Counted from the stretch's first letter, positions 1 through 48,340 are shown. The stretch: 64,000 bases of DNA from Macrostomum lignano (GCA_002269645.1 NIVC01002468.1:62001-126000), one strand, 5' to 3'. Made by a program: numbers and translations. Notes: generated by a model not told the origin, from the letters alone.

Positions 1-321
1 GATAGGATTTTTCGTCATTTATTTCAACCAGTCGGTTTGTCACTTTTTCGGAAATCTACTTCGAGCTTACTTACTTCTATGTACTTACAGTGCTTAATTT
101 GACAGCCCCTTTCGAACATTTTGAAGAGTTTCTCTTTACTACTACCATGCAGTAGTTGATAATGTATATTTTACCAGCTTTCTCGTTTACTAACACACGG
201 AGGATTCGTGCGCTCAGGGGGTAAGGGATATTTAATCAAACACGGAAGCAACGTCACCAGTTATATTACACACAAGAGTACCTCCACAAATGAAATTAAT
301 TCAATTACAGCAGTTCCACTC

Positions 322-335
322 GTTGCCATGGCGAT
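322..335. promoter_or_regulatory. X-box-like (RFX) motif upstream of Cys-loop receptor copy 1
   Basis: GTTGCC-AT-GGCGAT, one mismatch to RYYNYY-WW-RRNRAC, about 150 nt upstream of the ATG. It ends a 28-nt block (302-329) identical to 14174-14201 in otherwise diverged flanks. Confidence 0.5.
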
Positions 336-480
336 TGATTCAGCACTGGTAGACCAGACGCGTTATTGGCTAAACAGCTATCCTATAGGGTCTTTTCCTC
401 AACTCTGCTTTCTATGATGATATAGAGTAGAAAGCAGTAACCAACATTGGCCTCTTACACCGTATCGACACATCGACACA

Positions 481-1770
481 ATGTCCGTACGCGAAATTCT
501 ACTAGTCGCCACAGCGATTATAGCTGCCACTTGTGGCGGCTCAGCTCAAGATAGAGATCTGCAACACGAGCTGCTGCAGTACTTGAAGAACAATATCACC
601 AACTATAGTCCGCTGCTGCGACCCACAATTAACGCCTACAAGCCTACGTACATCACTATGGATACATCCTTGACCCAGCTGGTATCGGTAGACAGTGCCA
701 AGCAAAGCGTCAAGATTGGGGCTTTCGTAATGGCCGGCTGGACCGAGGAGCGTCTGGTCTGGGATCCGGCCAAGTTCGGGAACCTAACCGTGATTAACTG
801 GGACAATTCGAATGTCTGGTTTCCTGTCATCCTCATCTATAATGGCATCGGAGACAACCAGATGCTCACTCCGCAGATGCCAGTGTATCTAAGGTCGATC
901 CAGTCCAACCTTACCAGAGTCATCGCGGGATGGCGTCGAGAGTTCGAATTCTCGTGTGAGTTCGACGTGAGCAAATTCCCCATAGACAGGCACGTCTGCG
1001 AGCTCGAGTTCTTCTTTAGCGACCAGGGCCATGACAACCAAATGCTGATTCCTGTCAAGAACAATTTGACGCCATTTCAAATAGACGGACTTTATCGAAC
1101 TAACAGCGAATGGAAGTTGTTGAATGCGTCGACGTCGTCCGAACGGAAGCCGTACAAACTCGTTCAAGGTGCACCGGATGTGCTTCTACCAACTTATGTG
1201 ATCCGTCTGGAGATCGAGAGAGTCTCCGCCTACTACTTTATGAACATCATCACACCACTGCTACTGCTGACTTTGCTACAAGTGCTGGTATACTTTGTGC
1301 CCCTGGAGTCTGGCGAGAAGCTGGGATTCGGCATCACAATCATGCTCAGCTACACTGTGTTCCTTCTTCTGCTGGACAGCATCGTGCCCAAGTCGCAGAC
1401 AACACCAGCGATCGCTTCGTTCATCACGGCCGCTATGATCTTGTCGACGATATCTCTGCTACTAACGTCGCTAATTATGCGTCTGCACTTCGCTCCGGAG
1501 GGCAATCGGATGCCGGCCTGCATGCGTGCCGTTTTGATTGGCTTCTTGGCTCGAGTGTTCTGCGTTGGCGGTGCTGCCAAAATCAACAAGGTCGAGATCA
1601 AGAAAGGGACTAGCATCGAAAAAAAGAACACTACTGATGAAGAGGACACTCCAGTTGTTCGATCCGATTGGGTGGTTGCTACGCACGCTGTCGAACGACT
1701 CATGGTTGCTATGGGAGTGGCCGCCACTGCAGCTATTATTGGAGTTTTCGTCATCCAACCGTACACCTAA
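481..1770 (+). CDS. Intronless Cys-loop ligand-gated ion channel subunit, divergent nAChR-like, predicted cation-selective (429 aa), copy 1
   Basis: Signal peptide, WxDxxLxW and WxP-x-I-x-x-Y-N motifs, Cys-loop C159-x13-C173 (CEFDVSKFPIDRHVC), four TM helices, GEK motif before M2 (ESGEKLGFGITIMLSYTVFLLL). No vicinal Cys in loop C. Confidence 0.93.
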   Translation: MSVREILLVATAIIAATCGGSAQDRDLQHELLQYLKNNITNYSPLLRPTINAYKPTYITMDTSLTQLVSVDSAKQSVKIGAFVMAGWTEERLVWDPAKFGNLTVINWDNSNVWFPVILIYNGIGDNQMLTPQMPVYLRSIQSNLTRVIAGWRREFEFSCEFDVSKFPIDRHVCELEFFFSDQGHDNQMLIPVKNNLTPFQIDGLYRTNSEWKLLNASTSSERKPYKLVQGAPDVLLPTYVIRLEIERVSAYYFMNIITPLLLLTLLQVLVYFVPLESGEKLGFGITIMLSYTVFLLLLDSIVPKSQTTPAIASFITAAMILSTISLLLTSLIMRLHFAPEGNRMPACMRAVLIGFLARVFCVGGAAKINKVEIKKGTSIEKKNTTDEEDTPVVRSDWVVATHAVERLMVAMGVAATAAIIGVFVIQPYT

Positions 1771-2164
1771 AGACCGCAAGAGATTATACTGAGTCGGCTT
1801 ATGAAACTTTCTGAAAAAAGATTCTTTAATAATAATAAATTCTCTATGCTTCTATCTTCTAATTAAATGAATTAATTCACATCAAAAGTGCATATGTGCT
1901 TCTAGTCTTCTCATTTAATCGAGCGACTTTCAGCATTGTTCTGTTCTACGAGCTATGCTAATTGTATGCCACTCTGTGCCACTAGAGACAACTAGAATCA
2001 GATTATGCAAGCATCTAAAAAACAGCTCTGGTTCTCTACTCACAGCAATTGCTGCCGCAGTAGGCTTGCACCCCAATCCTTCATAAAACGATAGGTTCAT
2101 CAAGGGGATAGCTACTCAATCATGCAGTAAACTAAGAGGCACTTTTCATGATTGCAAATGGTGA

Positions 2165-2178
2165 GTTGTTATGGTAAC
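2165..2178. promoter_or_regulatory. X-box (RFX) motif downstream of Cys-loop receptor copy 1
   Basis: GTTGTT-AT-GGTAAC matches GTHNYY-AT-RRNAAC. Positionally homologous to 16032-16045. Confidence 0.5.
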
Positions 2179-2348
2179 AGTTAATGAATTCTTAGCAAAG
2201 GCTTGGTAAGCACTCGATAAAACTAACTGTGGACAGAGCCTTCAGCGAACAGGCAGGACTATTGTTAATTTAACGAAATCACAAGCTTTTTGGGAAGAAA
2301 GTTTTAGAGAGCGTGTGTTTACTGCCACCAGAAAAAGTTATTTGCAAA

Positions 2349-3288
2349 TAGGGATTCCAAAATCCCGACATTTTACAATCCCGGGATTGAATAGTCCCGA
2401 AATCCCGATGCTGTTGAAATCCCGGGATTCAAAATCCCGGAATCCCGGTGCTTTTGCAATCCCGGGATTAAAAATCCCGGGATTCGATTCCCAAAAAAAT
2501 CCCGGGATTCAAATCCCGGATTTTTGGCCCCAATCCCGGGATCCCGGGATCCCGGGATTGGAATCCCTAAATTGCTAGACGGACTGTGCGGCGTGCCGCG
2601 TGCAGTAGTCATGGTCTCGCGACTCTCAGAGTCTCAGGGCCTTTTCATATTACCAATTCCAGAACCAGAATCGGTTCGGAATTCGAAGAAAAACAGCAGT
2701 ATAACTATTAAACTCTGTTAATATTTGACTGCCTTAACAGCCTCACTTAGCACAATTTTTCACTTTCTTCTTGGCGACTGTCATTCAATAATAAAAACTT
2801 TATAGCACGTATCTCCCTCTAGTTATGGAGACAAAAAGTTTATACTTCACAAATTGGTTCTTGTTCTGGAACCAGAGCAAGCAATATGAAAAGGCCATCA
2901 GTCTCGTCTCGTGGTAGAAAACGAAAAAAAGTTAAAATTATCTATAATTTACAGTTCACATTAACAATTTTTAGCTCAATTAGGACAGGAGCTTTGCAAA
3001 TGTTTAACGTTTCATTGAGAAACAGCAAAAACAAATAAATGTTTTATTATTCAAATAAACGTTTAGACTTTAAATTATCTAATTTAGGCATTGAAAGGTC
3101 GTTCTAATCCCGGACCAATCCCGGGATTAAGGCCTTGAAATCCCGGGATCCCGATCCCGGTCTTTTGCAATCCCGGGATTAAAAATCCCGGGATTCGATT
3201 CCCAAAAAAATCCCGGGATTCAAATCCCGGATTTTTGGCCCCAATCCCGGGATCCCGGGATCCCGGGATCCCGGGATTGGAATCCCTA
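2349..3288. mobile_element. Non-autonomous hAT-type DNA transposon (MITE-like) with ATCCCGGGAT subterminal repeats
   Basis: TIRs TAGGGATTCCA...TGGAATCCCTA, 8-bp TSD TTTGCAAA at 2341-2348 and 3289-3296, many palindromic ATCCCGGGAT motifs. An internal duplicate right end finishes at 2569. Confidence 0.75.
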
Positions 3289-3482
3289 TTTGCAAAGACG
3301 ATTTTTTTCAACAGGTGGAATAAAGGCCCGTTTGAGCTACTGAAACTTGAAAGCGGAACCGGGCATTTTTATTCAGCTCGAGAGGGAGAATCCAAACACG
3401 AATGGAATAAAATATGACGGAAACAACTACAAGTATGTGCATATGGCATATTTCTATATATCTCTCCTCCCCTCCCCTCCCC

Positions 3483-3900
3483 TAATACTAAAACTGACGC
3501 GATGTTTGTCTGTCTGTGTGTTGTAAGTGAACTCCTACAATTCTGGCAAGTCAGCGTCGAAACTTATATGGGAAAACTGCAAATTTTCCGGAGCAGGCTT
3601 TAGGCTATTTTAATTTTCACATTTTAACATCCCTAAAAAAGCAGAAAACTGCTTTTCAGCCACCAATAACCTTCTTTGGCCACTCTGACTGGGGCTGCAG
3701 CCAGTTTGTAAAAAAAGCCACCCCAACCTCCGCCCGCGGGTCACTGTGTATTGAGGGGTGGTGGGTGCGCGTGTTCTGCGTTCAATGCAAATAAAACCCC
3801 CCGCATGTTGGGGGGTTGAGGTCAAGTTAATGCTTCCCCCAGAACGGGGGTTGGGCTTGGGTTGAGTGTACATAGCAGTTGTACAGTGTAAACAGATAGA
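3483..3900 (+). mobile_element. Probable non-autonomous Helitron/Helentron-like element fragment
   Basis: 5' ctaatactaaaa followed by a GTCT microsatellite. Shares blocks CAGCCACCCCAACCTCCGCCCGC and GTACATAGC...TGTACAGTGT with 6772-7540. Family call by general resemblance only; ends approximate. Confidence 0.4.
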
Positions 3901-4442
3901 TATAGACTGTGTCGAGATTCATTTGGTTTTATTATTGGCGCCTTTTTTCCATAGGCAGCCCTGTGTATTAGTTTGGCAGTGAAATTCAATGAATAAACTT
4001 GCGAGCTTCTCTATCTCTAGCAAGCAGTCGGGAAATCGGTAAATTTCAAACGCTAACTGTTCCTCGAGTTTTAAACTTTGAGAGGAGACACTTATATTGC
4101 TGGAAAGATCTTGCAACGCTGAGTTCGGGGATAAAAGTTGTTTGCTTTATATATGAAAAGAAAAAGCACCGCATTTAAAAAACTATTTCCATACTTTTTT
4201 AACTTTCTGCAAAAAATTGTACTCAGTTTTGCGAGACGTAATAGATAAAGTTGGGGGAGGGTTCAACTTCTCACTGCTGCTGTGTATTGGAGGGTTGATT
4301 TAGATTGCGCAATTGCGCAATGTTTTTGTTAACTTTAACTGAGACTGATACTGACTGACTGTGAAATCGGTTGCGCAATGAATTGATTCAATTATTTCAA
4401 TATTTTTATCAGTTGTCTTTTAACACGAAGCTGTGCGTAGTT

Positions 4443-4466
4443 CTAACCCTAACCCTAACCCTAACC
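4443..4466. repeat. Short interstitial telomere-type repeat (CTAACC)4
   Basis: ctaaccctaaccctaaccctaacc read directly; complement of TTAGGG. Confidence 0.8.
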
Positions 4467-4549
4467 AATGAATCCGGAGAGTTGAGTTGTTTGACGGAAA
4501 AAATTCGATTGAGTCCAGTTTAGTGGAGACGATTTCAATGTTTAAAATT

Positions 4550-5570
4550 TGACGAAGAGGATTTCTTTTTCGTGGAGAGGATTTCGATGGTGTTCAGTTT
4601 CACGGAGAGGATTTCGATGATGTTCAGCTTCACGGAGAGGATTTCGATGATGTTCAGCTTCACGGAGAGGATTTCGATGATGTTCAGCTTCACGGAGAGG
4701 ATTTCTGTTTCGTGGAGAGGATTTCGATGGTGTTCAGTTTCACGGAGAGGATTTCGATGATGTTCAGCTTCACGGAGAGGATTTCGATGATGTTCAGCTT
4801 CACGGAGAGGATTTCGATGATGTTCAGCTTCACGGAGAGGATTTCTGTTTCGTGGAGAGGATTTCGATGGTGTTCAGTTTCGTGGAAAGGATTTCGATGA
4901 TGTTCAGTTTCACGGAGAGGATTTCGATGATGTTCAGCTTCACGGAGAGGATTTCTGTTTCGTGGAGAGGATTTCGATGGTGTTCAGTTTCGTGGAAAGG
5001 ATTTCGATGATGTTCAGTTTCACGGAGAGGATTTCGATGATGTTCAGCTTCACGGAGAGGATTTCTGTTTCGTGGAGAGGATTTCGATGGTGTTCAGTTT
5101 CACGGAGAGGATTTCGATGATGTTCAGCTTCACGGAGAGGATTTCGATGATGTTCAGCTTCACGGAGAGGATTTCGATGATGTTCAGCTTCACGGAGAGG
5201 ATTTCTGTTTCGTGGAGAGGATTTCGATGGTGTTCAGTTTCGTGGAAAGGATTTCGATGATTTTCAGTTTCACGGAGAGGATTTCGATGATGTTCAGCTT
5301 CACGGAGAGGATTTCTGTTTCGTGGAGAGGATTTCGATGGTGTTCAGTTTCGTGGAAAGGATTTCGATGATGTTCAGTTTCACGGAGAGGATTTCGATGA
5401 TGTTCAGCTTCACGGAGAGGATTTCTGTTTCGCGGAGATAATTTATGATTTATTTCTGCTTTATGGAGACGATTTTGATGGATTTAAGTTTCACGGAGAG
5501 GATTTCGAAGAAGTCCAGTTTCACGGAGAGGATTTCTGCTTCGCGGAGAGGATCTTGATGGATTTGGCAT
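4550..5570. repeat. 30-bp minisatellite with a 20-bp variant and 140-bp higher-order units
   Basis: Unit CACGGAGAGGATTTCGATGATGTTCAGCTT. The 4x30+20 = 140-bp period is seen between 4572 and 4712. Degenerate copies at both edges. Confidence 0.95.
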
Positions 5571-5580
5571 CTTCAATCAG

Positions 5581-6660
5581 TCAGAGAAGAGAGTAAAGAG
5601 AAGAATGAAAAGAGAAGAGAGATGAGATGATAGAAAACAGAGTAGAAATGAGTGGAGAGATTAGACATGACAGATGGGAGAGAAGAGGGGAGTAAGGCGG
5701 GAACGAAGGAGAGAGAAGAGAAGAGGAGAGAGGAGATGAAGGGAGAGGAAATGAGAGAGGAGATATGAGATAGCAGAGAGGAGACAGGAGAGAGAAGAAA
5801 AGAGGGATAAGAGCGTACAGAGGCAATAGAAGAGAGGAAAGAGAGGAGAGAGGTGAGAGGAGAGAGATGAAAGATCAGAGATCAGAGATTTAAGAGAAGA
5901 AAGTAGTGAGGAGAAAGAAGAGGGTAAAGATGAGAGTGCAGAGAGGAGAGAAACGAGAGGAGACAGGTGGTAGAAAGGAGTGTAAAAAACAGGAGATAAG
6001 AAAGGAGAGGGTGAGAGTGAGAGCATATAGGAAAGTGTAAAAGGGGAGCAGAGGAGAGAGAATAGATAAGTGAGTAGAGAAGAGATATGAGGGAGGAGAG
6101 ATTCGAGATTAGAGAAGAGATGAGGGGAGATGAGAGGAGAGAAGAGAGAATGGAGAGGAGAGAAAAGAGAGGAGAGGAGACAGGTGATGCAGTAGAAAGG
6201 AGGGAAGAAAGATGGTAGATAAGAAAGGAGAGGGTGAGAGCGTATAAGAGATACGAGAAATGAGAGCAGAGAGAAGAGAGAAAAGGGAAGAGAGAAAGTA
6301 GAGCGGAGACGATAGATAAGTGAGTAGAGATGAGATATGAGAGAGGAGAGAAAAGGGGAGAGATAAGAGAGAAGATAGGAGAGTAGACAGGAGAGGGTAC
6401 AGACGAAAGACGAGGGAGAAGAGATAAATAAGGGAGTAGAGATGAGAAAAGAGACAGAAGAGATAAGCGAGAATAGTAGGAATAGAGGAGAGAGAGAAGC
6501 GAGAGAAGGGAGAGAGTAGGGAGAAGAGAGATGAAAGATCAGAGATGAGAGAGATGAAAGTGTAGAGAGGAGTAATTAGTGAGGAGAAAGAAGAGAGTAA
6601 AAATAAAAATCAGAGCGCAGGGCGCAAGAGATGAGAGATGGGAGTTGATAGATTGTAGAG
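5581..6660. repeat. Purine-rich (GA) low-complexity tract
   Basis: Plus strand is almost entirely G/A. The Leu/Ser-rich minus-strand ORFs are a by-product. Confidence 0.9.
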
Positions 6661-6771
6661 GATTTGGAAGATGGGATTCAATTCATGGAATTTCAGCTGA
6701 TAGGAGTTCTTCCCCTTCAGAATTCCGGTGATGGGAGTTCTTCCGCTTTCTTCTCCAGAGAAGGAGTTCCA

Positions 6772-7540
6772 CTCGTCTACATTTTAAAATCAAAACTCTG
6801 TCTGTCTGTGTGTGTCTGTCTGTCTGTCTGTGGACAATTTTGTTCGCTATAGACTCCCAAACCACCCGACCAAATGACACCAAATTTTGCACCCACCCTA
6901 AACTCACTACGGAGAATGTCTTAGGCTATCTTTAAATTTCCTAAATTTGAGTCTTCATACCTAAAATTGCAAAAAACTGCTCAAAATGCGCGATTTTTCC
7001 ACTAAATCCTTCATAGCGCCGCGCCACTTCTACCGATGTTCTTCAAATTTGACACAATCAATCTTCAACTATTTTGACACAATCATGTAAAATTTTAAGT
7101 CTCAAAGTTAATCTTAAACGGCGCTGTGCACTTTTAAAGTTAGGCTGTTTTTTTTCAGCGAGGCAGCCACCCCAACCTCCGCCCGCCTGCCTCTCCCGAT
7201 CCGGGCAAAGGGTGTAAATAGGTTTTAAAATGACTAACTTTCGGCTGCCATAACTTTGCTCAACGTGAGGCGATTGGCTTCAAATTTGACACAATACTTT
7301 ATTAACTCATTCTCTGTCTGAATGTAAAGTCTCAACTCCGTATCTTAATCAGGACAGAAACTAAAAGCATGTGAATTTTGTCTGCTTTTTCTGTTGTTTA
7401 TGCCGCTCACTCACTCATTCCCCCAGTCCAGACGAAGGGTCAGGCGATAGGGCTCAATGTACATAGCGAATGTACAGTGTTTTGGAATAACTTTTCAATA
7501 GCCTTCTGCCGCAACCCGCGCGTGGAGAGGCTACGTTTAG
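6772..7540 (+). mobile_element. Probable non-autonomous Helitron/Helentron-like element
   Basis: Begins TCTAC..., then a (GTCT/GT)n microsatellite and a ccgaccaaatgacaccaaattt block, with a GC-rich hairpin near 7500-7535. Shares motifs with 3483-3900. Ends approximate. Confidence 0.45.
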
Positions 7541-7984
7541 CCTTGACAGTTTAGCGAGAGATTCAAACCAGTGTCCTCTGTATAGACAAGTCTGCAGCAG
7601 TTTAACAGTGGATGGCAAATCAAGGCGATGTGGGATGGTTTGTAAAAATAGCGAAAAATTAATAACTGATTAGTAGTGATTACAATGCAATCCTACTAAA
7701 TTAGTTACACCATGAAAATTTTAACATTAAGATTCGCATAAGGTACTTTAAAATTTAAATGGCTCCTAAGAAATACGTATTTCCTTGGTTGCTAGACTGC
7801 TGCAGACTGTGGTGGTGGAGCTGGGCTGGAGGGAGATACACAAATTCCTCTCAGGGCTGCTAATTGGCCAGAAATATGATGTGATTAAAGCATAACAACC
7901 ATGAGAGTACTACGCCCCACAAACGCTTTCGAAGCGGGGATTGGCAGACTTTAACCTCAAATGCCAGATAAAGAACCAAGCTCA

Positions 7985-10480
7985 TGGCTGATGAGATGAG
8001 AGTGAAAAGGAGAAGGAATAGACTATAAGAAGAGAGGAGAAGCGAGAGGAGGATAAGAGAAAAGATAGAAGACAAGAAGAGAGACGATGGGGTAAGGATA
8101 AGGAGTGAGCAGATAATATTGGAGTAAGAAGCGAGAGGAGGGGAGAGAGAAGGGAGAGGAAAGAGTAGAAGTGAGAAGAGGGAGAGAGAAGATGGGAGAG
8201 ATGAGACAGGATCGATGACAGAGGAGAGCAGAGAAGAGTGAGAAGAGAGTAGAGATGAGAGATGAAGGAGGAGAGAGCAGAGTGCAGAAAGGCGAGAGAA
8301 GAGAATAGAGGGGAGAGAGTATAGAAGAGAGAAGAGAAGAGGAGTAAGGAAAGAGAGGAATCAGAAGAGGGTAAAGAGAAGAGTACACTGAAGATTGGAG
8401 AGTACAGATGACAGAAAAGAGAGGGGATGAAAGTGAACACGATATCTGAGAGGAGAGAGGAGAGCGGAGATAGGAGTCAGATGAGGGGAAAGAGAAGAGT
8501 ACAGAGGAGAGAGGTGAGAACGTACGAGTATACGAGAGTAAGGATGACAGATGAGAGAGGGAAGATGAGACTGAGAGAGCAAAGACGAGAGTGAACACAC
8601 GAGAGATGGTAGAGTAGAGAGAAAAGAGGATAGATAAGAAATGAGAGATGAGAGATGAAAGGTGAGACAAAGGGAGAGAGAGAAGTGAGTGAGGAGAGAG
8701 GAGGGGAAGGGAGAGAATCGAGAGGACAGGGGAAAGAGGGGAAAGGATGAGAGAGAGATGAGAGAGGGGAGAGGAGAGAGGGAGAGATAGAGGTAGAGAG
8801 CATGCAGAGAGAAATGAGAAGAGATAAGAGAGAAAAGATAAAAGAAGAGAAAGGAGAGATAGATAAGAGAGCAAAGACGAGAGAGGAGAGGTGGGGGAAG
8901 AGACGATAGAAGAGAGGAGAGGAGAAAGACGAGAGAGTACAGAGTACAGAGGAGGGAGGAGAGGAGAAAGGAGAGAGAAGTGTTCGGAGAGGGTAGAGTA
9001 AGGAGTGAGAAGAGGGGAGAGGGAGGAGAGGAGAGGAGAGAGGAGAGTAGAGAGCAGAGGGAAGATAGAGTAGAGAGCAGAGAGAAGATGGAGTAGAGAG
9101 CAGAGGGAAGATAGAGTAGAGAGCAGAGAGAAGATAGAGTGGAGAGCAGAGGGAAGATAGAGTAGAGAGCAGAGAGAAGATAGAATAGAGAGCAGAGGGA
9201 AGATAGAGTAGAGAGCAGAGGGAAGATAGAGTAGAGAGCAGAGAGAAGATGGAGTAGAGAGCAGAGGGAAGATAGAGTAGAGAGCAGAGAGAAGATAGAA
9301 TAGAGAGCAGAGGGAAGATAGAGTAGAGAGCAGAGGGAAGATAGAGTAGAGAGCAGAGAGAAGATGGAGTAGAGAGCAGAGGGAAGATAGAGTAGAGAGC
9401 AGAGGGAAGATAGAGTAGAGAGCAGAGAGAAGATAGAGTGGAGAGCAGAGAGAAGATAGAGTAGAGAGCAGAGAGAAGATAGAGTGGAGAGCAGAGAGAA
9501 GATAGTAGAGAGCAGAGAGAAGATAGAGTAGAGAGCAGAGAAAAGATAGAGTAGAGAGCAGAGAGAAGATAGAGTGGAGATCAGAGAGAAGATAGTAGAG
9601 AGCAGAGAGAAGATAGAGTAGAGAGCAGAGAGAAGATAGTAGAGAGCAGAGAGAAGATAGAGTAGAGAGCAGAGAAAAGATAGAGTAGAGAGCAGAGAGA
9701 AGATAGAATAGAGAGCAGAGGGAAGATAGAGTAGAGAGCAGAGGGAAGATAGAGTAGAGAGCAGAGAGAAGATGGAGTAGAGAGCAGAGGGAAGATAGAG
9801 TAGAGAGCAGAGAGAAGATAGAGTGGAGAGCAGAGAGAAGATGGAGTAGAGAGCAGAGAGAAGATAGTAGAGAGCAGAGAGAAGATAGAGTAGAGAGCAG
9901 AGAGAAGATAGTAGAGAGCAGAGAGAAGATAGAGTAGAGAGCAGAGAGAAGATAGAGTAGAGAGCAGAGAGAAGATAGAGTAGAGAGCAGAGAGAAGATA
10001 GAGTAGAGAGCAGAGAGAAGATAGAGTAGAGAGCAGAGAGAAGATAGAGTAGAGAGCAGAGAGAAGATAGAGTAGAGAGCAGAGAGAAGATAGAGTAGAG
10101 AGCAGAGAGAAGATAGAATAGAGAGCAGAGGGAAGATAGAATAGAGAGCAGAGGGAGGATAGTAGAGAGCAGAGAGAAGATAGTAGAGAGCAGAGAGAAG
10201 AGAGAGTAGAGAGCAGAGGGAAGAGAGAGTAGAGAGCAGAGAGAAGATAGAGTAGAGAGCAGAGAGAAGAGAGAGTAGAGAGCAGAGAGAAATGGGAAGA
10301 GATAAAACAGGAGAAAGGGAGATAAGAGAGCAGAGACAAGAGAGGAGAGGAGAGGAGAGAAAAGAATAAGAGGGAATAGACGCGAGAAGAGGGGATAGAG
10401 GAGAGAGAGAAGAGACCACAGACCAGAGAGAAGAAAGAAAACAGAAGAGAAGGTAGAGATAGAAGTTTCTAAGGATCCAA
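7985..10480. repeat. GA-rich tract containing a 23-bp minisatellite (about 9045-10290)
   Basis: Unit AGAGCAGAGAGAAGATAGAGTAG with 21-bp variants; about 55 copies embedded in degenerate GA sequence. Confidence 0.95.
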
Positions 10481-13400
10481 CTTCCAAGGGACACAAGGAG
10501 AGGCAGAGGCCATGAGTTTGCCTGACATTCTGCGCAGCACCCTAACCAAAAATATTAATGTTTGCTTCAAATACTAATTTTACATGAATGTACTCTATTT
10601 TATGTTTAACTCTATCCTAAATTCCTAACTATTAAAAAGTTTTTGTTTAAGTATGACTTCAGATTTTAGAATACTTTCAAAAATAGTTCTAGGGATTGGA
10701 GTTCCCCGGGTTCAAAATCCGCGGGTTTCAACAGCTTGTCGATATATAATAGACACAACCACAGATCCTAAATCTTAGTCAATTAATCAGGCTTCGCAAA
10801 AGAACATAACTAAACACAGGATTGCTTTGGTTTAAATTTTTACATGTAAAAACTATCAATTGATGCGACTATTTATAATATCTTACGAAAACCAACGCAA
10901 GTGTCAATGACCTTTCATTTTGCAATACTTGGAGGGATGGACACTTAAACAGGCTCGTCAAGTTAAAAGATGACTATTTGGACTGCTCTGAAACAAATAA
11001 ATAGGACCAGAATATTTTTATTTTGGCAGAAAATTAAAGCTGTTTTCCGGGTAAGCAATTCTCTAAAAAGGTTTCGAGAAACAAGGCATCTAGGCCTTAT
11101 CTATTCTTTTTCACGATCCCTGGTTTGGTTCCTGTTAGGAGACGTGGGAAAGCCGGAAGGGCCTCCTTGCGAGTTGTGCGGGTGGTGCTGCACTCAGAGG
11201 TCTTGTGAGATGGCGCCAGGTTGCAGCTCTCCAGCCGGTTGTGGAGACCGCCTTGCTGTAATTGTACTGAGCTATAATTGTCACTTTTGGATGCACTCTG
11301 TCAAAATGGATGCACATATGCAAGTTTTGTTCAATAGACAGTGAGACAAAGGCACTGTCTTGTAACCCAGTGTCAAAACTGAATGCACACTGTCAAATGT
11401 ACTAGCAAATTGTGAATAAAGGTTGGAGTTTGTCTTTTTCGGTTGAAAATCGGCATTATTGCATTTGAGTTTGTCAAAATAGATTGAAAATTTCAACAAG
11501 CGATACAACAGACTGTCAAAATTGAATGCAAAGATATCAATACTGAGTGCAGATTTTCCAAAAATAGAAAGTAAAAAGGTGTAGCTAAAACTCGGTCTTG
11601 TTGTTTCTGTGAAACACTCTATTCGTGAGCTACTTCCTAAGTTGAATCTTAGGTTCAAATTTTGCTGTGTGAAGCGCCCCCAGCTGGGAGTTGGAAGTCT
11701 TTCCCTACTGGGAGAAAATATTAAGCGGCAAATCACATGACTATAGGTGTTGTGGCTCTGGCTTGTGCCCCTCAGATAAAAATCCGGCTTATGCCACTGA
11801 CATCTGGCTGCTGTGGGCTAGACCAAGGTAGCTAATATGCAAATTTTTGTAAGAATAATAAAAAATTTTCTACCTTCCGTCTATATCTGTATGAAACATT
11901 CTGTTGGGGCGCTAAGTTGACAATATTTACTCATCTCATGCGCGACATGCCAATTGAAAATAGAGCTAGTATTTGTTTGGTCTGAAGTTAAATTATTTGG
12001 TTGGATTATTGCCGACTAGACCAAGTTAATTGACTTTTTTCTTCTTCAGAAGTGCTCCTCGGAGGGTAAGAAAACAGATTGAGGCCTCTAAAAAGTTGAG
12101 ATGTTTGACGCGACGCAGGTGTTAGGGTTTCAAATCTCTGGCCTCTTACGATCTCCGGTGCCTTACGTTCTCCTGTAGGTATAATTAAAAGTCAAGGGAT
12201 TTTTTATAAAGGGATTAAAGTTGATAAGAAATTGGTAGCCTTTGAGATCGTCACACGTGTGCTATGTACGCAGTGCTTACTTGTCAAATGAGTATACGCA
12301 TAATAATACTAATAGCTCAGCACTATACAGTTCACCACATGCCTTGGCTGCTTCATTATGGCCAGTATTTTATACCTGTTCACTGTTCAGCATGATCTTC
12401 CGTCCAAAGAAAATGACAAATTGAAGCGTCGAATTAGAGAAAAAGGCACGAGTTTTGCTCTTCACAATGTAGCGGAATGTACCAGCTATAGTTAAAAATA
12501 TTGCAAGCAGCAAGAGACGGTGATCAAAAGAGGTGAAAAAAGTTGTTTGCATCGAGGATAAGGCCAAGAAGCTTGTCGAAAGGGTTCACATGGAGTCCTG
12601 TCAATTCGGTCTAAAAGCCTCGTCAAAATCAGATGTTACAGTAATGTAGCCGTCACTCCGATTGCCAGGCATAGGCATGTACGCAGAACTTACATATTGT
12701 TGGGTTGCTGTTCAATTCCCAGTGCATACTTGCGGCTGTGCACACCGGATGTACACTGCAGGTGACAGACTATCGATCTTAATCGTACCTGAAAGTCATG
12801 TAGCACTACGTAGATGTACATACATGACAATTCCTTTCTATCCAGGTGCAAAGAAACGGCCAAAATCAACGGCTTAACCAAAATTGCCTGAGTTTGCTGC
12901 TCAAAGTTTGTGATTCATATAGTCGTGACTGCATGGGATTTAAAGCGAAATGCCATCTAACTCGTCTACGACACTCCACCACAGGCACTTCACCCTTTCT
13001 GTATGCCGTATCTCTCTGTCTTCTCTTGCGCCTTGTTTGAATTTCAGGCATTAATGCCGACAGAATTTGTATATTTGCATATAAGAAGCGCCCTACTTCA
13101 TCAATTTTAGGGCGGCCTTTGGATTCAATCAATTGGGAGATGAGGCTGCCAATTTCTTAACTCGCCCGACTGCCGTGCGAACTACTACGAACAGACGCCA
13201 GTTGGCTAAAAAAGCAACGCATCGAGCAGAGACAAAAAAGCTGATCGCCCAGAATATTTGGACTTTGCAAGAGAAGGAAACCGAGTCAGACTTAAAAAGT
13301 CTCAACGCGATGACCGACCGCAAAGGCGGAAAATTCCAAATGGCTTGGAATGCGCGCAGATAAAAAATGTAACACGAGCGTAAAAGATGTCTCAGTCTGA

Positions 13401-14193
13401 ATGTACTAGCTGACTGCTCTTAAAGGGTGCGTCAATGGACAGCAATCGAAACGCTGCTTCAATTTTGTTAGCCGAAGTGGACCGATTAATTAATTACCAA
13501 TGTTTGATCTTAGTATAAACTATCTGTTTTACTAAGTAACGAATAGATATTTGTCAGCAAGTGAGACGGTTTCAGTAACTATTCCATTTTCTTTAGATGA
13601 GTAAAATGTACACTACTTTTTTCTAATACAGTGGTCTGATTCAGTGAACAGCCTTGGAACTATTGTGAAAGAGAAATAATTTTGATGCCTGCACTTTGGG
13701 TCTTTAAAGGACGTGTGATCACAGACACAGCGGGACCGCAGACAAGAAGCCGGAAATCCTAAAGCAAACCTTAGTTTTTTATTAGCTCGGAGATCCTAAG
13801 CTGATTTGCGATTCCCGGGTCGAATGGTGGCTGCCTCGCAACCTCCGAGGTAGACTAATCAGAAACTGTCCCGGAAACTGCAAAGCAGCTACTGTTCTCC
13901 GAAGCGGAGATTGTAAAGCACTTGTAGTCTCCAGAAGAAACCCCTAAGGCCAGCCAGGAGACTGTACAGTCACTTCACATCATTTTGACGAGTTACAAAT
14001 TCCTACTACCAGTAGTTACATGGATGTGTGTTTGATCAGCTTTATTTTACCAGCATTTTATTAACGCGAGGACCAGTGCACCCCGAGGGAATGGAATAGT
14101 TAGCCAAACACGGAAGCAATATTGGCAGTTATGACGAGCATATACTTCCTAACTTCCACAAACGAGATTCATCCAATTACAGCAGTTCCACTC

Positions 14194-14207
14194 GTTGCCA
14201 TAGCGAC
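14194..14207. promoter_or_regulatory. X-box (RFX) motif upstream of Cys-loop receptor copy 2
   Basis: GTTGCC-AT-AGCGAC fits RYYNYY-WW-RRNRAC, about 155 nt upstream of the ATG. Confidence 0.55.
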
Positions 14208-14359
14208 GGCTTCAACAATGGTAGGTGAGACGCATTACTGTTTAACAGCTATGCTTATGGTGCTTTGCGTCAGCTCTGCTTTCTATTTAATTCTGCCGTA
14301 AAGTAGAAAGCAGTAACTAACACAGTAACCAAAATTGGCTTCTTACACATATCGACACA

Positions 14360-15667
14360 ATGTCCGTACGCGGAATTCTACTAGCCGCCACAGCAATTTT
14401 AGCTGCAACTTGTGGCGGCTCAGCTCAGCATAGAGATCTGCAACACGAGCTGCTGCAGTACTTGAAGAACAATATCACCAACTATAGTCCGCTGCTGCGA
14501 CCCACAATTAACGCCTACAAGCCTACGTACATCACTATGGATACATCATTGACACAGCTGGTATCGGTAGACAGTGCCAAGCAAAGCGTCAAGATTGGCG
14601 CCGTTTTAATGGCCGGCTGGACTGAGGAGCGTCTGGTCTGGGATCCGGCCAAGTTTGGGAACCTAACCGTGATCAACTGGGACAATTCGAATGTCTGGTT
14701 TCCTGTCATCCTCATCTATAATGGCATCGGAGACAACCAGATGCTCACTCCGCAGATGCCAGTGTATTTGATGTCGATCCAGCCCAACCTTACCAAAGTC
14801 GTCGCCGGGTGGCGTCGAGAGTTCGAATTCTCGTGTGAGTTCGACGTGAGCAAATTCCCCATAGACAGGCACGTCTGCGAGCTCGAGTTCTTCTTTAGCG
14901 ACCAAGGCCATAACAACCAGATGCTGATTCCTTTCAAGAACAATATGAAGCCATTCCAAATAGATGGACTTTATCGAACTAACAGCGAATGGAAGTTGTT
15001 GAATGCGTCGACGTCGTCCGAACGGAAGCCGTACAAACTCGTTCAAGGTGCACCGGATGTGCTTCTACCAACTTATGTGATCCGTCTGGAGATCGAGAGA
15101 GTCTCCGCCTACTACTTTATGAACATCATCACACCACTGCTACTGCTGACTTTGCTACAAGTGCTGGTATACTTTGTGCCCCTGGAGTCTGGCGAGAAGC
15201 TGGGATTCGGCATCACAATCATGCTCAGCTACACTGTGTTCCTTCTTCTGCTGGACAGCATCGTGCCCAAGTCGCAGACAACACCAGCGATCGCTTCGTT
15301 CATCACGGCCGCTATGACCTTGTCGACGATATCTCTGCTACTAACGTCGCTAATTATGCGTCTGCACTTCGCTCCGGAGGGCAATCGGATGTCGGCCTGC
15401 ATGCGTGCCGTTCTGATTGGCTTCTTGGCTCGAGTGTTCTGCGTTGGCGGCGCTGCCAAAATCCATAAGGTCGACGGAGCAGAGGACGTCGAGATCAAGA
15501 ATGAGACTAGCATCGACAAAAAGAATGCTACTGACGAAGAGGACACTCCGGTTGTTCGATCCGATTGGGTGGTTGCTGCGCACGCTGTCGAACGACTCAT
15601 GGTTGCTATGGGAGTGGCCGCGACCGCTGCTATTATTGGAGTTTTCGTTATCCAACCGTACACTTAA
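14360..15667 (+). CDS. Intronless Cys-loop ligand-gated ion channel subunit, divergent nAChR-like (435 aa), copy 2
   Basis: Paralog of 481-1770 with the same Cys-loop, GEK and M1-M4. Net 6 aa longer in the M3-M4 loop. Homology extends into about 0.4 kb of 5' and 0.55 kb of 3' flank. Confidence 0.93.
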   Translation: MSVRGILLAATAILAATCGGSAQHRDLQHELLQYLKNNITNYSPLLRPTINAYKPTYITMDTSLTQLVSVDSAKQSVKIGAVLMAGWTEERLVWDPAKFGNLTVINWDNSNVWFPVILIYNGIGDNQMLTPQMPVYLMSIQPNLTKVVAGWRREFEFSCEFDVSKFPIDRHVCELEFFFSDQGHNNQMLIPFKNNMKPFQIDGLYRTNSEWKLLNASTSSERKPYKLVQGAPDVLLPTYVIRLEIERVSAYYFMNIITPLLLLTLLQVLVYFVPLESGEKLGFGITIMLSYTVFLLLLDSIVPKSQTTPAIASFITAAMTLSTISLLLTSLIMRLHFAPEGNRMSACMRAVLIGFLARVFCVGGAAKIHKVDGAEDVEIKNETSIDKKNATDEEDTPVVRSDWVVAAHAVERLMVAMGVAATAAIIGVFVIQPYT

Positions 15668-16031
15668 TGACAGCTCGAGATTAGCCTGATGGGGCTTATG
15701 AAACTTACTAAAAATTGATTCCTAAATATTTATCAACCCTCTATTATTTTCTCTTCTAACTACGAGCTAAATCCGATAAAGTGTTTTGCATCAAAAAGTG
15801 CACGGGTGCCTCTAGTTGTCTCTAGTGGCAATTACGAGCTTAGAACAAGAACAATGCGAAATGTCGGCTAAACTAATTATCAAGCTGAATAAGTGCGAGC
15901 ATCTATAAAGAATGGCTCTTGCTTTCTTGTTGCACTGCCAATTCCCAACGAAATGAGTTTCAGAGGAAATGACCGGATTCGTCCCTCCATCATTCAATCA
16001 ACTAAGCTTCAGTTTGCACCATTGCAAATGA

Positions 16032-16045
16032 GTTGCCATGGTAAC
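16032..16045. promoter_or_regulatory. X-box (RFX) motif downstream of Cys-loop receptor copy 2
   Basis: GTTGCC-AT-GGTAAC, a near-palindromic textbook X-box. Confidence 0.6.
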
Positions 16046-16792
16046 CAAATTTTGGCAAAGACTCGGTAAACACTCAATAGAACTGTGGGCAGAGCTTTCA
16101 GCTAACCATGCAGCAGGGCTATTGTTAATTAAATAAAATCACGAGCGAGCCTTTTGGGGACAGAGCTGCAGAGGGCGTGTGTTTGCAATGAAAACAGAAC
16201 TTGGCTGGAATATGGACACGGCAGCCTGGGAACCTGCTGGACACCTGCCAGTATATGCTATATATGAATTGTTAAATATTTACCTCAACACTCCGTGTTA
16301 TATTTTCTCTCCTAAACCTTACTAGCAAAGAAAATTGTTAGCATAGAAAACATTTTCTACAGTTAAAACAAAGGCCTGTTTTTAGACATGTCATAGACAG
16401 CTATTGCATATCAGCATATTCGGCCATAAATCGATAGACACAATCGAGTTTATTGATCAAGCAAGCACTGTCAAAACACAACACAAAAATGCCTGCGCAC
16501 ACATGATTGCTTTGTTAAAATAAGGTATAATTGCCGAGCTAAGAGTAGAGAAACGGAACACTGTATGATTGGAAGGAATGTTCGATTTAAGATGTTTTAT
16601 AGTTAGATCGAGCTAGAATACTTTAGAATTTGATCTGCATTTCAATCAAATACACACTTGCAATCGCTATATTCTTATAGTGTTCCAGTGCGCCAACCAA
16701 TGTCATACGGTTAGTGTCGCAGCGTCCTTGGTATTGAAACTAGAATCGAACTGAACTGAAAGTTTTACTCTATATCGGGAGAAGCTCCCAGA

Positions 16793-43598: not shown

Positions 43599-44330
43599 TT
43601 TGTGTACCTTGGTTATACTTCAATATTTTGCCCTGCTGAGAATATAGATCATCATAGCATCAGTTTTTATGTTCAATATACTTATAGTGTTCCTGTTCCA
43701 CCATAGCTATAGCTGCAGCTATAGGATCTTATGGAAATATGGTAAAATAGGTGCATATGGCAACTACAGATATGCCTATAGTAGATAGCTACTCTTATGG
43801 CTATGACGATGAAATATAGTAGCTGTTGTTGCATTTTGTAGATTCCTATAGCCATAGGCTTAGAGTTAATAATTAAAAAAAATAACAAAATATTAGAAAT
43901 AGATAGAGACAATAGAGTAAAACAAAGAGTACTTTGGTAGATTGTATTATAGACTAGATTTTTTTAAGTTGGAAATCCAGTTACCAGCTAGCCCTTAGGG
44001 CTCAAAATCTAGTTGCCAATGTTTATTTTTGGTTGCACATTGGCAATTAGCTAAATTATCAAAGATAGATATTTCTAAAGCTGCACTTGAAAAGCAGAAA
44101 TTTGTTCACTTAACTCTTGTCTAAGATTGCTATCTATTCTACAAACAATAACAAACCAATAATTCTATCATATTGATTCATATAGCACTTTTATTATACT
44201 TTTAGACTTACAAACTTAAAAATTAGGCCTATACCTAATAAAGTACCTACAATAAAACACTAGCAAAATCAAACTTTAAATAATGTGAAAAAGTTTAGCA
44301 TTAGTACTTTCAGTTCAGTAGGCCCCTAGC

Positions 44331-44844
44331 CCACACTCCGGATCATGTAGTATATGCCCAAAAATTTGGGCATGCATTAGCCTTGCACGCCAAAATTAGG
44401 GGTGTACAATTGTCGTGTATCATTCCTAAGAAAATAGTATACGTGCATACCTGGTGTGAAGTTGTGAACTTTATAGAATCATGCGTAAAAGTTATTCTAA
44501 AGCTGAAAAAAAATGAAAAAATTCATTTTTAAGTGCAAATTTTAACTTTTCTGGTTTTTTTCAAGCTTGTAAAAGAACATTTAAACAAATCTTTATGTGT
44601 ATAAATTTTCCATTGTTAATAGGCCTAGTATTACCAAAAAACATGAAAAGCAACCAAATTATCTGGTAATAAAGGTCTCTTACACAATTTAAAAAAGGTA
44701 TTTTATTGTCACAATGTAAAAAGGTTATTTATTGTCACAACACTAGCATATTTTAGAGAATGGGCATGCACTACATTTTTTTAGCGTGCATTTGTTATTA
44801 TTCAATTTTTGTTTGGGCGTGCACTTAGCATGATCCGGACTATG
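44331..44844. mobile_element. Mutator-like MITE, about 514 bp
   Basis: TIR cores TCCGGATCATG / CATGATCCGGA with further imperfect inverted similarity. Flanked by the 9-10 bp direct repeat (G)GCCCCTAGC. Confidence 0.78.
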
Positions 44845-48264: not shown

Positions 48265-48340
48265 TTAACCACCAAAAAAATTACGCTGGAACTCTTTTTT
48301 AAATTCTACCGCAGTGTGCAGTCTCTCTCAGGCCTTAACA

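What the first reader, a model, noticed from the sequence alone, without database searches (positions are those of the whole stretch)
551..15317. Patchwork identity between the receptor paralogs: pore homogenised, complementary ligand loops D/E/F divergent
Seen: 1087-1438 is identical to 14966-15317 (352 nt, no synonymous change), covering loop C, M1, M2 and most of M3. Other identical patches are about 551-668, 796-888 and 931-1025. Between them differences cluster, both synonymous and non-synonymous: F82V and V83L (loop D); R138M, S142P, R146K and I148V (loop E); D185N, V192F, L196M and T197K (beta8/loop F). Non-coding flanks are far more diverged. Inference: an old duplication under repeated gene conversion that spares the complementary face of the binding pocket, so the two subunits may share a pore and assembly interface but differ in ligand tuning.
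Basis: partly seen in the sequence, partly recalled or inferred. Interest (0 to 1): 0.7.

Follow-up and report, generated by a model that had tools for sequence, protein, structure and literature searches.

The report
Gene conversion between two flatworm receptor genes
Two neighbouring intronless copies of an orphan nicotinic-receptor-like channel gene, from a flatworm related to Macrostomum lignano, were partly overwritten by each other through gene conversion, which is a real but ordinary pattern, and there is no evidence yet that selection protects the ligand-binding loops.

Summary
ORF A (481-1770, 429 aa) and ORF B (14360-15667, 435 aa) differ by 52 substitutions and one 18-nt indel. Bases 1087-1438 equal 14966-15317 (352 nt). 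The three shorter identical blocks and all ten listed amino-acid changes are correct.

A synonymous-free run of 149 codons is far beyond chance (P≈1.5e-5). It is not synonymous constraint, because the same pore codons differ at 56-60% of synonymous sites from the Macrostomum lignano relatives. The homologous flanks are about 0.4 diverged, against dS 0.10 for the coding sequence. Interlocus gene conversion after a roughly 2.2-kb tandem duplication is well supported, unless the assembly is at fault.

The finer claim is only partly supported. Synonymous differences alone are not clustered within the extracellular domain (P≈0.2), although they sit next to the replacements (P≈0.001). The replacements fall mainly at positions that vary across the family, and dN/dS in the islands is 0.08-0.35. 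The recent tract also homogenised hypervariable loop C. Selection "sparing the complementary face" is therefore unproven.

The proteins are non-alpha and lack the loop B Trp and the vicinal Cys, so they are orphan cation-channel subunits. This is a new member of a known kind, of modest interest.

The parts
481..1770 (+). Gene A: intact intronless ORF of 429 aa. It is a nAChR-like pentameric ligand-gated channel subunit with signal peptide, ligand-binding domain, Cys-loop C159-C173, M1-M3, a short cytoplasmic loop and M4.
   Evidence: ORF list. Pfam Neur_chan_LBD 1.4e-27 and Neur_chan_memb 3.8e-20. Best solved relative is human alpha7 nAChR, E=8e-42. Secondary structure of the model.
14360..15667 (+). 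Gene B: intact intronless ORF of 435 aa, a tandem paralog of A in the same orientation. The coding sequences start 13,879 nt apart and the spacer is 12.6 kb.
   Evidence: tblastn finds only these two copies in the window.
1087..1438 (+). Copy A of the 352-nt tract identical in both genes (codons 203-319 plus one base). It covers beta9, loop C, beta10, M1, M2, the M2-M3 loop and most of M3. It is the most recent conversion tract. The synonymous-free run extends to codon 351 (nt 1533).
   Evidence: The upper 95% bound on pS in the tract is 0.03.
14966..15317 (+). Copy B of the 352-nt identical tract.
551..668 (+). Identical block 1 (118 nt; B 14430-14547). It covers the N-terminal helix to beta1.
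   Evidence: 0 differences in 26 synonymous sites.
669..795 (+). Divergent island around beta1-beta2 / loop D (B 14548-14674). Its core at 720-727 has 5 differences in 8 nt, giving F82V and V83L. F82 aligns with alpha7 W55.
   Evidence: pS 0.26, omega 0.08. Alignment to alpha7.
796..888 (+). Identical block 2 (93 nt; B 14675-14767). It covers loop A (W113...Y120).
889..930 (+). Divergent island in beta5'-beta6 / loop E (B 14768-14809), carrying R138M, S142P, R146K and I148V plus 4 synonymous differences.
   Evidence: pS 0.36, omega 0.35.
931..1025 (+). Identical block 3 (95 nt; B 14810-14904). It covers the Cys-loop and loop B.
1026..1086 (+). Divergent island in beta8 / loop F (B 14905-14965), carrying D185N, V192F, L196M and T197K plus 4 synonymous differences.
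   Evidence: pS 0.36, omega 0.21.
1439..1767 (+). 3' part of the coding sequence, with moderate divergence. I320T and P345S are both derived in B relative to the M. lignano copies. The cytoplasmic-loop changes and M4 are here. The last 15 codons have pS 0.42, which is flank-like.
15470..15487 (+). An 18-nt in-frame indel (VDGAED in B, absent from A between 1590 and 1591) in the M3-M4 cytoplasmic loop.
117..480 (+). Upstream flank of A, homologous to 13981-14359. Divergence rises away from the gene: K80 is 0.13 at 421-480, 0.26 at 301-420 and 0.46-0.50 at 117-300. It contains a perfectly conserved 28-mer (302-329 = 14174-14201).
1771..2320 (+). Downstream flank of A, homologous to 15668-16184 (K80 about 0.41, with many indels). 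Homology ends without a poly(A) tract, so this was a DNA-level duplication of about 2.2 kb and not a retrocopy.

Best explanation
A and B are two intact, intronless, head-to-tail paralogs of an orphan nicotinic-receptor-like cation-channel subunit. The subfamily is so far seen only in macrostomid flatworms.

A DNA segment of about 2.2 kb was duplicated after the split from the M. lignano lineage. Flank divergence is about 0.4, whereas divergence from the M. lignano copies is saturated in the extracellular domain and about 1.0-1.2 in the pore region. Non-reciprocal exchange between the copies (interlocus gene conversion) then overwrote parts of the coding sequence.

A very recent tract of at least 352 nt (possibly up to about 447 nt) removed all differences from beta9 to M3. 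Earlier or patchy tracts erased most of the divergence in the rest of the coding sequence. What remains are short islands whose silent divergence (pS 0.26-0.42) matches the flanks.

The islands contain the beta2/loop D, loop E and loop F positions, which are among the family's variable positions and evolve under purifying selection here.

Shown: the mosaic itself, its statistical significance, the contrast between coding sequence and flanks, and the absence of synonymous constraint in the pore region.

Inferred: that the cause is gene conversion and not an assembly artefact, and that the tract locations mainly reflect where sequence identity is highest. The constrained pore stays similar, so it recombines, so it stays identical. 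Selection for a shared pore or against homogenised loops is not needed to explain this.
For: - Identical 352-nt tract: P=3.4e-6 on all sites. The synonymous-free run of 149 codons has P=1.5e-5. It is still about 3e-6 for zero differences in the run (not corrected for where the run lies) if pore synonymous sites evolve at half rate.
- Pore-region synonymous sites differ at 52-60% between A or B and the three M. lignano paralogs, and among those paralogs. Constraint therefore cannot explain zero differences.
- Flank K80 is 0.38 and 0.41, against a coding dS of 0.105 (0.16 in the extracellular domain); Fisher P=6e-4. Divergence rises in a gradient upstream of the ATG.
- Island pS is 0.26-0.42, about the raw flank divergence of 0.30, with omega 0.08-0.35.
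- Synonymous differences lie next to replacements (P about 0.001), as expected for old unconverted segments.
- There is no excess of adjacent substitutions once the identical blocks are excluded (13 observed against 11.5 expected, P=0.35).
- Both ORFs are intact with overall omega 0.22.
- Homology ends without poly(A).
- The syntenic M. lignano locus has three old intronless tandem paralogs and a GIPC1-like neighbour.
Against: - Only one pair from one assembly is available, with no reads. Short-read polishing can copy one paralog onto another.
- No close ortholog or population data exist, so the segment-wise tree incongruence that defines conversion could not be shown.
- Synonymous-only clustering inside the extracellular domain is not significant (P about 0.2). 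The fine mosaic there could be a uniform dS of about 0.16 plus replacements at unconstrained sites.
- Island boundaries were drawn at the differences, which inflates island pS.
- No GC-biased signature appears in the tract (GC3 is 0.65 in the tract and in the 5' part of the gene).
- Flank divergence and dS need not be strictly comparable.
Confidence: 0.72

Rival explanations
1. One reading: conversion is recurrent, and natural selection removes conversion events that would homogenise loops D, E and F. The two subunits would then keep distinct complementary-face pockets (different ligand tuning) while sharing pore and assembly surfaces.
For: All 10 mature-domain replacements lie in three clusters at beta2/loop D, loop E and beta8/loop F (P about 6e-4, and 7e-4 even when only hypervariable columns are allowed). 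Linked synonymous differences persist beside them (P about 0.001). F82V sits at the position of alpha7 W55, a key pocket residue. Principal-face loops A and B and the Cys-loop lie in identical blocks.
Against: Island omega is 0.08-0.35, so there is no sign of adaptive divergence. At all 10 sites neither M. lignano protein compared matches copy A, and 7 of them show three different residues among A and those two proteins. Loop C, equally hypervariable among old paralogs, was homogenised. Synonymous-only differences also lie outside the loops (codons 63, 65, 88, 99, 105). R146K and I148V align to alpha7 Y118 and P120, next to the pocket-facing Q117 and L119 and not at them. These are mostly conservative changes. 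With one gene pair, chance placement of 3 islands cannot be excluded. Reduced recombination around mismatches gives the same picture without selection.
Confidence: 0.2
2. The divergent islands are not relics. They are short imports (micro-conversions) from a third family member elsewhere in the genome, or upstream of the window, onto an otherwise recently homogenised pair.
For: There are dense clusters: 5 differences in 8 nt at 720-727 and 3 in 5 nt at 889-893. M. lignano carries at least five or six family members, including three in the syntenic array. The window starts only 480 nt upstream of A, so further copies may exist.
Against: No third copy or remnant is in the 64-kb window. Island states show no consistent match to any one M. 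lignano paralog. Island pS equals flank divergence, which the relic model predicts without extra donors.
Confidence: 0.1
3. Assembly or polishing artefact: the identical tract, and perhaps the shorter blocks, were produced when reads from one paralog were used to correct the other.
For: Perfect identity over 352 nt with sharp edges. No read data are available. The proteins are absent from the public protein and contig collections searched, so there is no independent copy of the sequence.
Against: The copies are 13.9 kb apart with unalignable surroundings and about 30% diverged flanks, so they are not collapsed or haplotig duplicates. Differences occur within 100 nt on both sides of most blocks, which would anchor reads. 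The tract length is typical of real conversion tracts (own knowledge).
Confidence: 0.08
4. No conversion: a fairly recent duplication in which non-coding flanks simply evolve much faster, and synonymous sites of the pore region are constrained or mutationally cold.
For: Pore-region pS between distant paralogs (0.52-0.60) is lower than in the extracellular domain (0.71-0.83), which hints at some synonymous constraint or codon bias.
Against: Even at half the rate, about 12.8 synonymous differences are expected in the run and none is seen (P about 3e-6). The last 15 codons and the islands reach flank-level pS within the same gene.
Confidence: 0.05

Closest known systems
Interlocus (ectopic) gene conversion between young tandem duplicates, leaving mosaic divergence. 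Textbook cases are primate gamma-globin genes and L/M opsins, with the Teshima-Innan theory of divergence islands. These are cited from my own knowledge and were not retrieved here.
   Same: Head-to-tail paralogs a few kb apart. The coding sequence is much more similar than the flanks. There are sharp-edged identical tracts a few hundred nt long, and residual islands of old divergence that include functionally variable sites.
   Different: Here there is a single pair from one assembly, with no orthologs or polymorphism data. Selection on the islands is not demonstrated. The gene family (flatworm nAChR-like channels) has not, in the literature I could search, been described as undergoing conversion.
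Intronless, tandemly arrayed nAChR-like gene expansions of lophotrochozoans (Jiao et al. 2019, PMC6896357)
   Same: Single-exon nAChR-like genes in tandem, highly diverse in sequence, with paralogs clustering within species.
   Different: [quoted passage not shown] The present subfamily is only 24-32% identical to other channels in the 1.8-billion-protein library.
Macrostomum lignano array on NIVC01000059.1 (PAA92206.1 and two neighbours)
   Same: These are the nearest relatives, at 61, 57 and 51% amino-acid identity. They are also intronless, tandem and in the same orientation, with a GIPC1-like gene downstream as in the window. The M1-M2 pore sequence is almost invariant.
   Different: The three M. 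lignano copies are old (saturated dS) and show no homogenised tract. They are spaced 2-3 kb apart, not 12.6 kb. A and B are both closest to the middle copy (dN 0.34 against 0.45-0.49), so they are lineage-specific co-orthologs.
Orphan or re-purposed nAChR-like receptors: cephalopod chemotactile receptors and Alvinella Alpo4 (PMC11526382, PMC10338036)
   Same: nAChR-like fold, intronless (chemotactile receptors), no loop C Cys pair, and not expected to bind acetylcholine. The ligand pocket is variable and the cation pore is conserved.
   Different: No orthology was tested. Alpo4 keeps the aromatic cage, which A and B lack in part. No expression or ligand data exist for the flatworm genes.
Human alpha7 nicotinic receptor (PDB 7EKI and others)
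   Same: It is the best solved-structure match (E=8e-42, or 1e-50 with the family profile). It shares the Cys-loop, the GEK motif at the cytoplasmic end of M2, and the loop A and first loop C tyrosines.
   Different: About 25-30% identity. W149 aligns with Ser180, C190/C191 with Leu227/Val228, Y195 with a non-aromatic residue, and W55 with Phe (A) or Val (B). The cytoplasmic loop is much shorter.

Membership tests
Pentameric ligand-gated ion channels (Cys-loop receptors) | N-terminal ligand-binding domain followed by the transmembrane domain (Pfam PF02931 + PF02932) | tested here: met
   Both ORFs score above the curated cut-offs: 96.9 / 73.6 bits for A and 99.8 / 72.9 bits for B.
Pentameric ligand-gated ion channels (Cys-loop receptors) | Cys-loop: two cysteines 13 residues apart, with the FPFD-like motif between them | tested here: met
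   C159-x13-C173 with 'FPID', aligned to alpha7 C128-C142. It is invariant in the family alignment.
Pentameric ligand-gated ion channels (Cys-loop receptors) | Four transmembrane helices M1-M4 | tested here: met
   M1-M3 align to alpha7. The model has helices at 250-271, 277-299, 304-337 and 396-424, but its confidence is low (pLDDT 56).
Cation-selective (nAChR/5-HT3-type) branch | Glutamate at the cytoplasmic mouth of M2 (GEK motif) instead of the anionic-channel PAR motif | tested here: met
   'ESGEKLGFGITIMLSYTVFLLLLD' aligns with alpha7 '[25 protein letters not shown]'. Selectivity itself is inferred.
nAChR alpha-type (agonist-binding principal) subunit | Vicinal Cys pair at the tip of loop C | tested here: not met
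   Alpha7 C190/C191 align with L227/V228 in both copies.
Acetylcholine-binding pocket | Aromatic box: loop A Tyr, loop B Trp, two loop C Tyr, loop D Trp | tested here: not met
   Y120 (=Y93) and Y225 (=Y188) are present. W149 aligns with S180, Y195 with A231 or L235, and W55 with F82 in A or V82 in B. The alignment has only about 25-30% identity, so single positions could shift by a residue or two.
Interlocus gene conversion | Silent divergence is significantly heterogeneous along the paralogs, with tracts of identity | tested here: met
   P=1.5e-5 (synonymous sites) and 3.4e-6 (all sites).
Interlocus gene conversion | The converted region is younger than the duplication (silent divergence below that of the homologous flanks) | tested here: met
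   dS is 0.105 (0 in the tract) against flank K80 of 0.38-0.41.
Interlocus gene conversion | Segment-specific tree incongruence against orthologs or other paralogs (GENECONV/RDP-type evidence) | not testable with these tools
   The only relatives found (M. lignano) are saturated at synonymous sites in the extracellular domain and about dS 1 in the pore region. No closer sequence was found in any collection.
Interlocus gene conversion | The identity is real in the organism (read support) | not testable with these tools
   No reads are available.
Selection-maintained divergence islands | Islands coincide with sites under diversifying or divergent selection (dN/dS above 1, or fixed functional differences conserved in orthologs) | tested here: not met
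   Island omega is 0.08-0.35. Conservation of the A/B differences in orthologs could not be tested.
Lophotrochozoan intronless tandem nAChR-like expansions | Single-exon gene, tandem copies, family expansion in the lineage | tested here: met
   Uninterrupted ORFs in both species, with 2 copies here and 3 plus a fragment in the syntenic M. lignano locus. Neighbouring genes in the window do have introns.

The most novel reading that the evidence does not exclude
The flatworm subfamily might be a chemoreceptor-like offshoot of nicotinic receptors, analogous to cephalopod chemotactile receptors. Tandem copies would evolve modularly. Gene conversion would keep pore and assembly surfaces interchangeable so that subunits can co-assemble. 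Selection would hold short divergence islands at the complementary-face loops, including the loop D W55-equivalent (Phe in A, Val in B), generating pockets of different specificity from a shared chassis.
Probability: 0.12. Interest if true: 0.55.

Novelty: new member of a known kind. Interest (0 to 1): 0.3.

Why it matters
If confirmed with reads and orthologs, this is a clean small example of concerted evolution inside a ligand-gated channel gene pair. It carries one practical warning. In the large lineage-specific nAChR-like expansions of lophotrochozoans and flatworms, paralogs that cluster by species may partly reflect conversion and not recent birth, so duplication dates and pore-based trees can mislead. 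It also marks a compact, intronless, poorly sampled orphan channel family in macrostomid flatworms. The pore is nearly invariant while the ligand-binding domain diverges fast, and natural A/B differences at 10 positions offer a ready-made mutagenesis series. The biology itself, gene conversion between tandem duplicates, is well known.

Tried and rejected
- Exact-protein look-ups of A and B in public assemblies found nothing on record. The look-ups for P0001 and P0002 also failed.
- Two metagenome scans, one with protein A and one with the family alignment, found no relatives.
- The Rfam and tRNA scans of the window found nothing, so they gave no taxonomic marker.
- A cullin-5 exon search meant to pin down the species gave only about 70% hits to assorted animals and was not decisive. 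Assigning the window to a Macrostomum relative rests on the receptor array, GIPC1 synteny and 76-84% nucleotide matches to L001.
- AlphaFold with the 4-sequence alignment gave a low-confidence model (pLDDT 56). I used it only for secondary structure and ran no fold search.
- Multinucleotide mutation as the cause of tight clusters was rejected. There is no excess of adjacent differences once the identical blocks are excluded (P=0.35).
- No GC-biased conversion signature was seen.
- Polarising the loop differences with M. lignano outgroups was uninformative because the sites differ in every copy. Only I320T and P345S could be polarised, and both are derived in B.
- A retrocopy origin of one copy was rejected. 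Homology extends into both flanks and ends without poly(A).
- A haplotig or false duplication was rejected. The flanks are about 30% diverged and unalignable beyond about 0.4-0.55 kb.
- The conserved upstream 28-mer is not present in the M. lignano locus.
- Remnants of further paralogs in the window: none.

Full report
**What is there**

The first 16 kb of the window hold two uninterrupted ORFs on the + strand: A (481-1770, 429 aa) and B (14360-15667, 435 aa). Both carry the Pfam neurotransmitter-gated channel ligand-binding and transmembrane domains above the curated thresholds. Their best solved relatives are human alpha7 and other nicotinic subunits (E=8e-42, or 1e-50 with a family profile). 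tblastn finds no third copy or remnant in the 64 kb. Neighbouring genes are split by introns: a class-V aminotransferase, HPF1, cullin-5, a GIPC1-like gene and fn2-domain ORFs. The receptor genes are not.

**Checking the observation**

A MAFFT alignment of the two coding sequences gives 52 substitutions and one 18-nt in-frame indel.

Bases 1087-1438 are identical to 14966-15317 (352 nt). The other long identical blocks are 551-668, 796-888 and 931-1025.
- All ten amino-acid differences quoted are present.
- The loop labels agree with the alignment to alpha7. F82 aligns with loop D W55. Residues 138-148 lie in beta5'-beta6 (loop E). Residues 185-197 lie in beta8 and the beta8-beta9 loop (loop F). 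The tract spans beta9, loop C, beta10, M1, M2 and M3 to residue 319. The low-confidence AlphaFold model gives the same secondary structure.

**Is it more than chance?**

- Overall dS is 0.105 and dN is 0.023, giving omega 0.22.
- A 352-nt identical run given 52 substitutions in 1290 sites has P=3.4e-6 (0 of 300,000 permutations).
- Using only synonymous differences weighted by synonymous sites, the run without any synonymous change (codons 203-351, 117 synonymous sites) has P=1.5e-5.
- This is not synonymous constraint. In the same M1-M3 codons, A and B differ from the three M. lignano paralogs at 56-60% of synonymous sites, and those paralogs differ among themselves at 52-58%.
- Even if pore synonymous sites evolve at half rate, about 12.8 differences are expected and none is seen (P about 3e-6).

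**Flanks**

The duplicated unit extends beyond the ORFs. Positions 117-480 align with 13981-14359, and 1771-2320 with 15668-16184.

- K80 is 0.38 upstream (117-420) and 0.41 downstream (1801-2320), with many indels. This compares with dS 0.16 in the extracellular domain and 0 in the tract (Fisher P=6e-4 for extracellular-domain synonymous sites against the flank).
- Divergence rises stepwise upstream of the ATG: 0.13, then 0.26, then 0.46-0.50.
- It jumps to flank level at the stop codon, and the last 15 codons already have pS 0.42.
- Homology ends without a poly(A) tract, and the surroundings are otherwise unrelated. This is therefore a DNA-level tandem duplication of about 2.2 kb. It is not a retrocopy, and it is not two haplotypes placed side by side.

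**The fine mosaic in the extracellular domain**

The evidence here is mixed.

- Synonymous differences alone are not significantly clumped in codons 1-202 (P about 0.2).
- They do lie next to the non-synonymous differences far more than expected (mean distance P=0.001; 11 of 15 within 5 codons, P=0.0005).
- The ten replacements fall into three clusters (P about 6e-4). This holds even if only family-hypervariable columns are allowed.
- Within the variable parts there is no excess of adjacent substitutions (13 observed against 11.5 expected, P=0.35). Multinucleotide mutations are therefore not needed.
- Island pS (0.26, 0.36 and 0.36, and 0.42 at the 3' end) matches the raw flank divergence of about 0.30. 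The three identical blocks have 0 differences in 60 synonymous sites.
- The simplest reading is a mosaic of old, unconverted segments and homogenised segments. Island limits were drawn at the differences, which inflates island pS.

**Selection on the loops**

Nothing tested supports selection.

- Island omega is 0.08-0.35.
- At all 10 replaced positions neither M. lignano protein compared (P0001, P0002) matches copy A. At 7 of them A and those two proteins carry three different residues (hypergeometric P=0.004). None of the ten lies in an invariant column of the family alignments. Outgroup states cannot polarise them.
- Loop C is just as variable among the old paralogs, yet it lies inside the recent tract and is identical in A and B.
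- Synonymous-only differences occur outside the loops (codons 63, 65, 88, 99, 105).
- In the alpha7 alignment, R146K and I148V fall beside the pocket-facing loop E residues and not on them.
- The most suggestive change is F82V at the W55-equivalent position.
- A neutral alternative gives the same picture. Conversion needs high local identity, so the constrained pore and the conserved loops A, B and Cys-loop keep converting. Stretches that have accumulated replacements and linked silent changes recombine less.

**What the proteins are**

- They have a signal peptide, a Cys-loop (C159-x13-C173), the GEK motif at the inner mouth of M2 (typical of cation channels), four TM helices and a short M3-M4 loop.
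- They lack the loop C Cys pair (L227/V228), the loop B Trp (S180) and the second loop C Tyr. They keep the loop A Tyr (Y120) and the first loop C Tyr (Y225).
- They are therefore non-alpha, probably not acetylcholine-gated, orphan subunits.

**Relatives**

- An exhaustive HMMER search of 1.84 billion representatives finds only a handful of close relatives, at 43-67% identity. Everything else is at most about 37% identical, mostly 24-32%.
- Two of the close ones are named as Macrostomum lignano proteins in their source records (PAA92206.1 / A0A267H1R5 and A0A1I8GG98). The other two carry only MetaClust identifiers with no organism.
- The M. lignano contig NIVC01000059.1 carries three intact, intronless, same-strand paralogs 2-3 kb apart, a fragment, and a GIPC1-like gene downstream. 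That gene matches window 43.7-45.1 kb at 76-82% nucleotide identity. The window is therefore the syntenic locus of a related flatworm. The species is not identified.
- A and B are both closest to the middle M. lignano copy (extracellular-domain dN 0.34 against 0.45-0.49). Divergence from all M. lignano copies is saturated in the extracellular domain and about dS 1.0-1.2 in the pore region, whereas A and B flanks differ by only about 0.4. The A/B duplication therefore post-dates the species split.
- The M. lignano paralogs show no homogenised tract.

**Comparison with what is known**

- Intronless tandem nAChR-like expansions are documented for lophotrochozoans (PMC6896357). That paper does not mention gene conversion.
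- nAChR-like receptors that have lost acetylcholine binding and become chemosensors or orphans are known from cephalopods and Alvinella (PMC11526382, PMC10338036).
- Gene conversion between tandem duplicates that leaves islands of divergence is textbook population genetics (own knowledge).
- A literature search for conversion in ligand-gated channel paralogs found nothing specific.
- The finding is thus a new example of a known process in a little-studied family.

**What remains open**

I could not test read support, since no independent copy of the sequence exists in the searched collections. I also could not test segment-wise tree incongruence, because there is no close ortholog. The assembly-artefact rival (about 0.08) and the third-donor rival (about 0.1) therefore stand.

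**Verdict**

- Gene conversion is the best explanation (about 0.7-0.8 including the selective variant).
- The selective and functional reading is unproven (about 0.2).
- Interest is modest.

Noticed in passing
window 4574-5536; 5711-6383; 8133-10349 (23-nt unit at 9044-10291); 17060-17595: The 12.6-kb spacer between the two receptor genes is dominated by minisatellites and purine-rich low-complexity DNA. There is a 30-nt unit repeated 34 times, a 23-nt unit repeated 55 times at 93% identity, GA-rich tracts with GC skew up to +0.8, and a 28-nt unit repeated 18 times just after gene B. The long 'ORFs' listed there are repeat artefacts.
   Followed up: partly
window 2414-2569 and 3135-3288 (exact 108-nt repeat 2451-2558 = 3162-3269): Two copies of a roughly 155-nt element, 89% identical overall with a 108-nt perfect core, built of short palindromic GGGATT/AATCCC units. 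It looks like a MITE-like or foldback repeat downstream of gene A.
   Followed up: no
window 302-329 and 14174-14201: A 28-nt block (CAATTACAGCAGTTCCACTCGTTGCCAT) is perfectly conserved about 150-180 nt upstream of both start codons, inside flanks that are otherwise about 30% diverged. It is a candidate promoter or 5'UTR element. It is not found in the M. lignano locus.
   Followed up: partly
window 2201-2320 vs 16061-16184: The far end of the downstream homologous flank is less diverged (K80 0.24) than the stretch between it and the stop codon (0.34-0.69). It may be a conserved non-coding element or a separate small conversion patch.
   Followed up: no
L001 (M. lignano NIVC01000059.1) 7863-9188, 10001-11305, 12783-14105, 16369-16671: The syntenic M. 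lignano locus holds three intact intronless paralogs plus a C-terminal fragment. Their M1-M2 protein sequence is almost invariant although synonymous sites are near saturation. This indicates very strong purifying selection on the pore alongside a fast-evolving ligand-binding domain (dN 0.34-0.60).
   Followed up: partly
window 32958-37104 (-), with 35606-36643: Cullin-5 exons (Pfam Cullin; 70% identical to animal cullin-5) are separated by introns. One intron contains a long minisatellite that reads as a 345-aa pseudo-ORF.
   Followed up: partly
window 18980-19432 (-), 22616-23080 (-), 43694-45092 (+), 56264-57810 (+), 48314-48763 (+): Other gene fragments are present: a class-V aminotransferase exon, an HPF1 exon, GIPC1-like exons (syntenic with M. 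lignano), two fibronectin type II domain ORFs, and an ORF that looks by eye like the RNase H part of a retroelement (no Pfam match).
   Followed up: partly
window 1439 and 1513 (codons 320 and 345): The only two differences inside the synonymous-free run downstream of the identical tract are replacements derived in copy B (I320T in M3, P345S after M3). Either they arose after conversion or the tract ends at 1438.
   Followed up: partly
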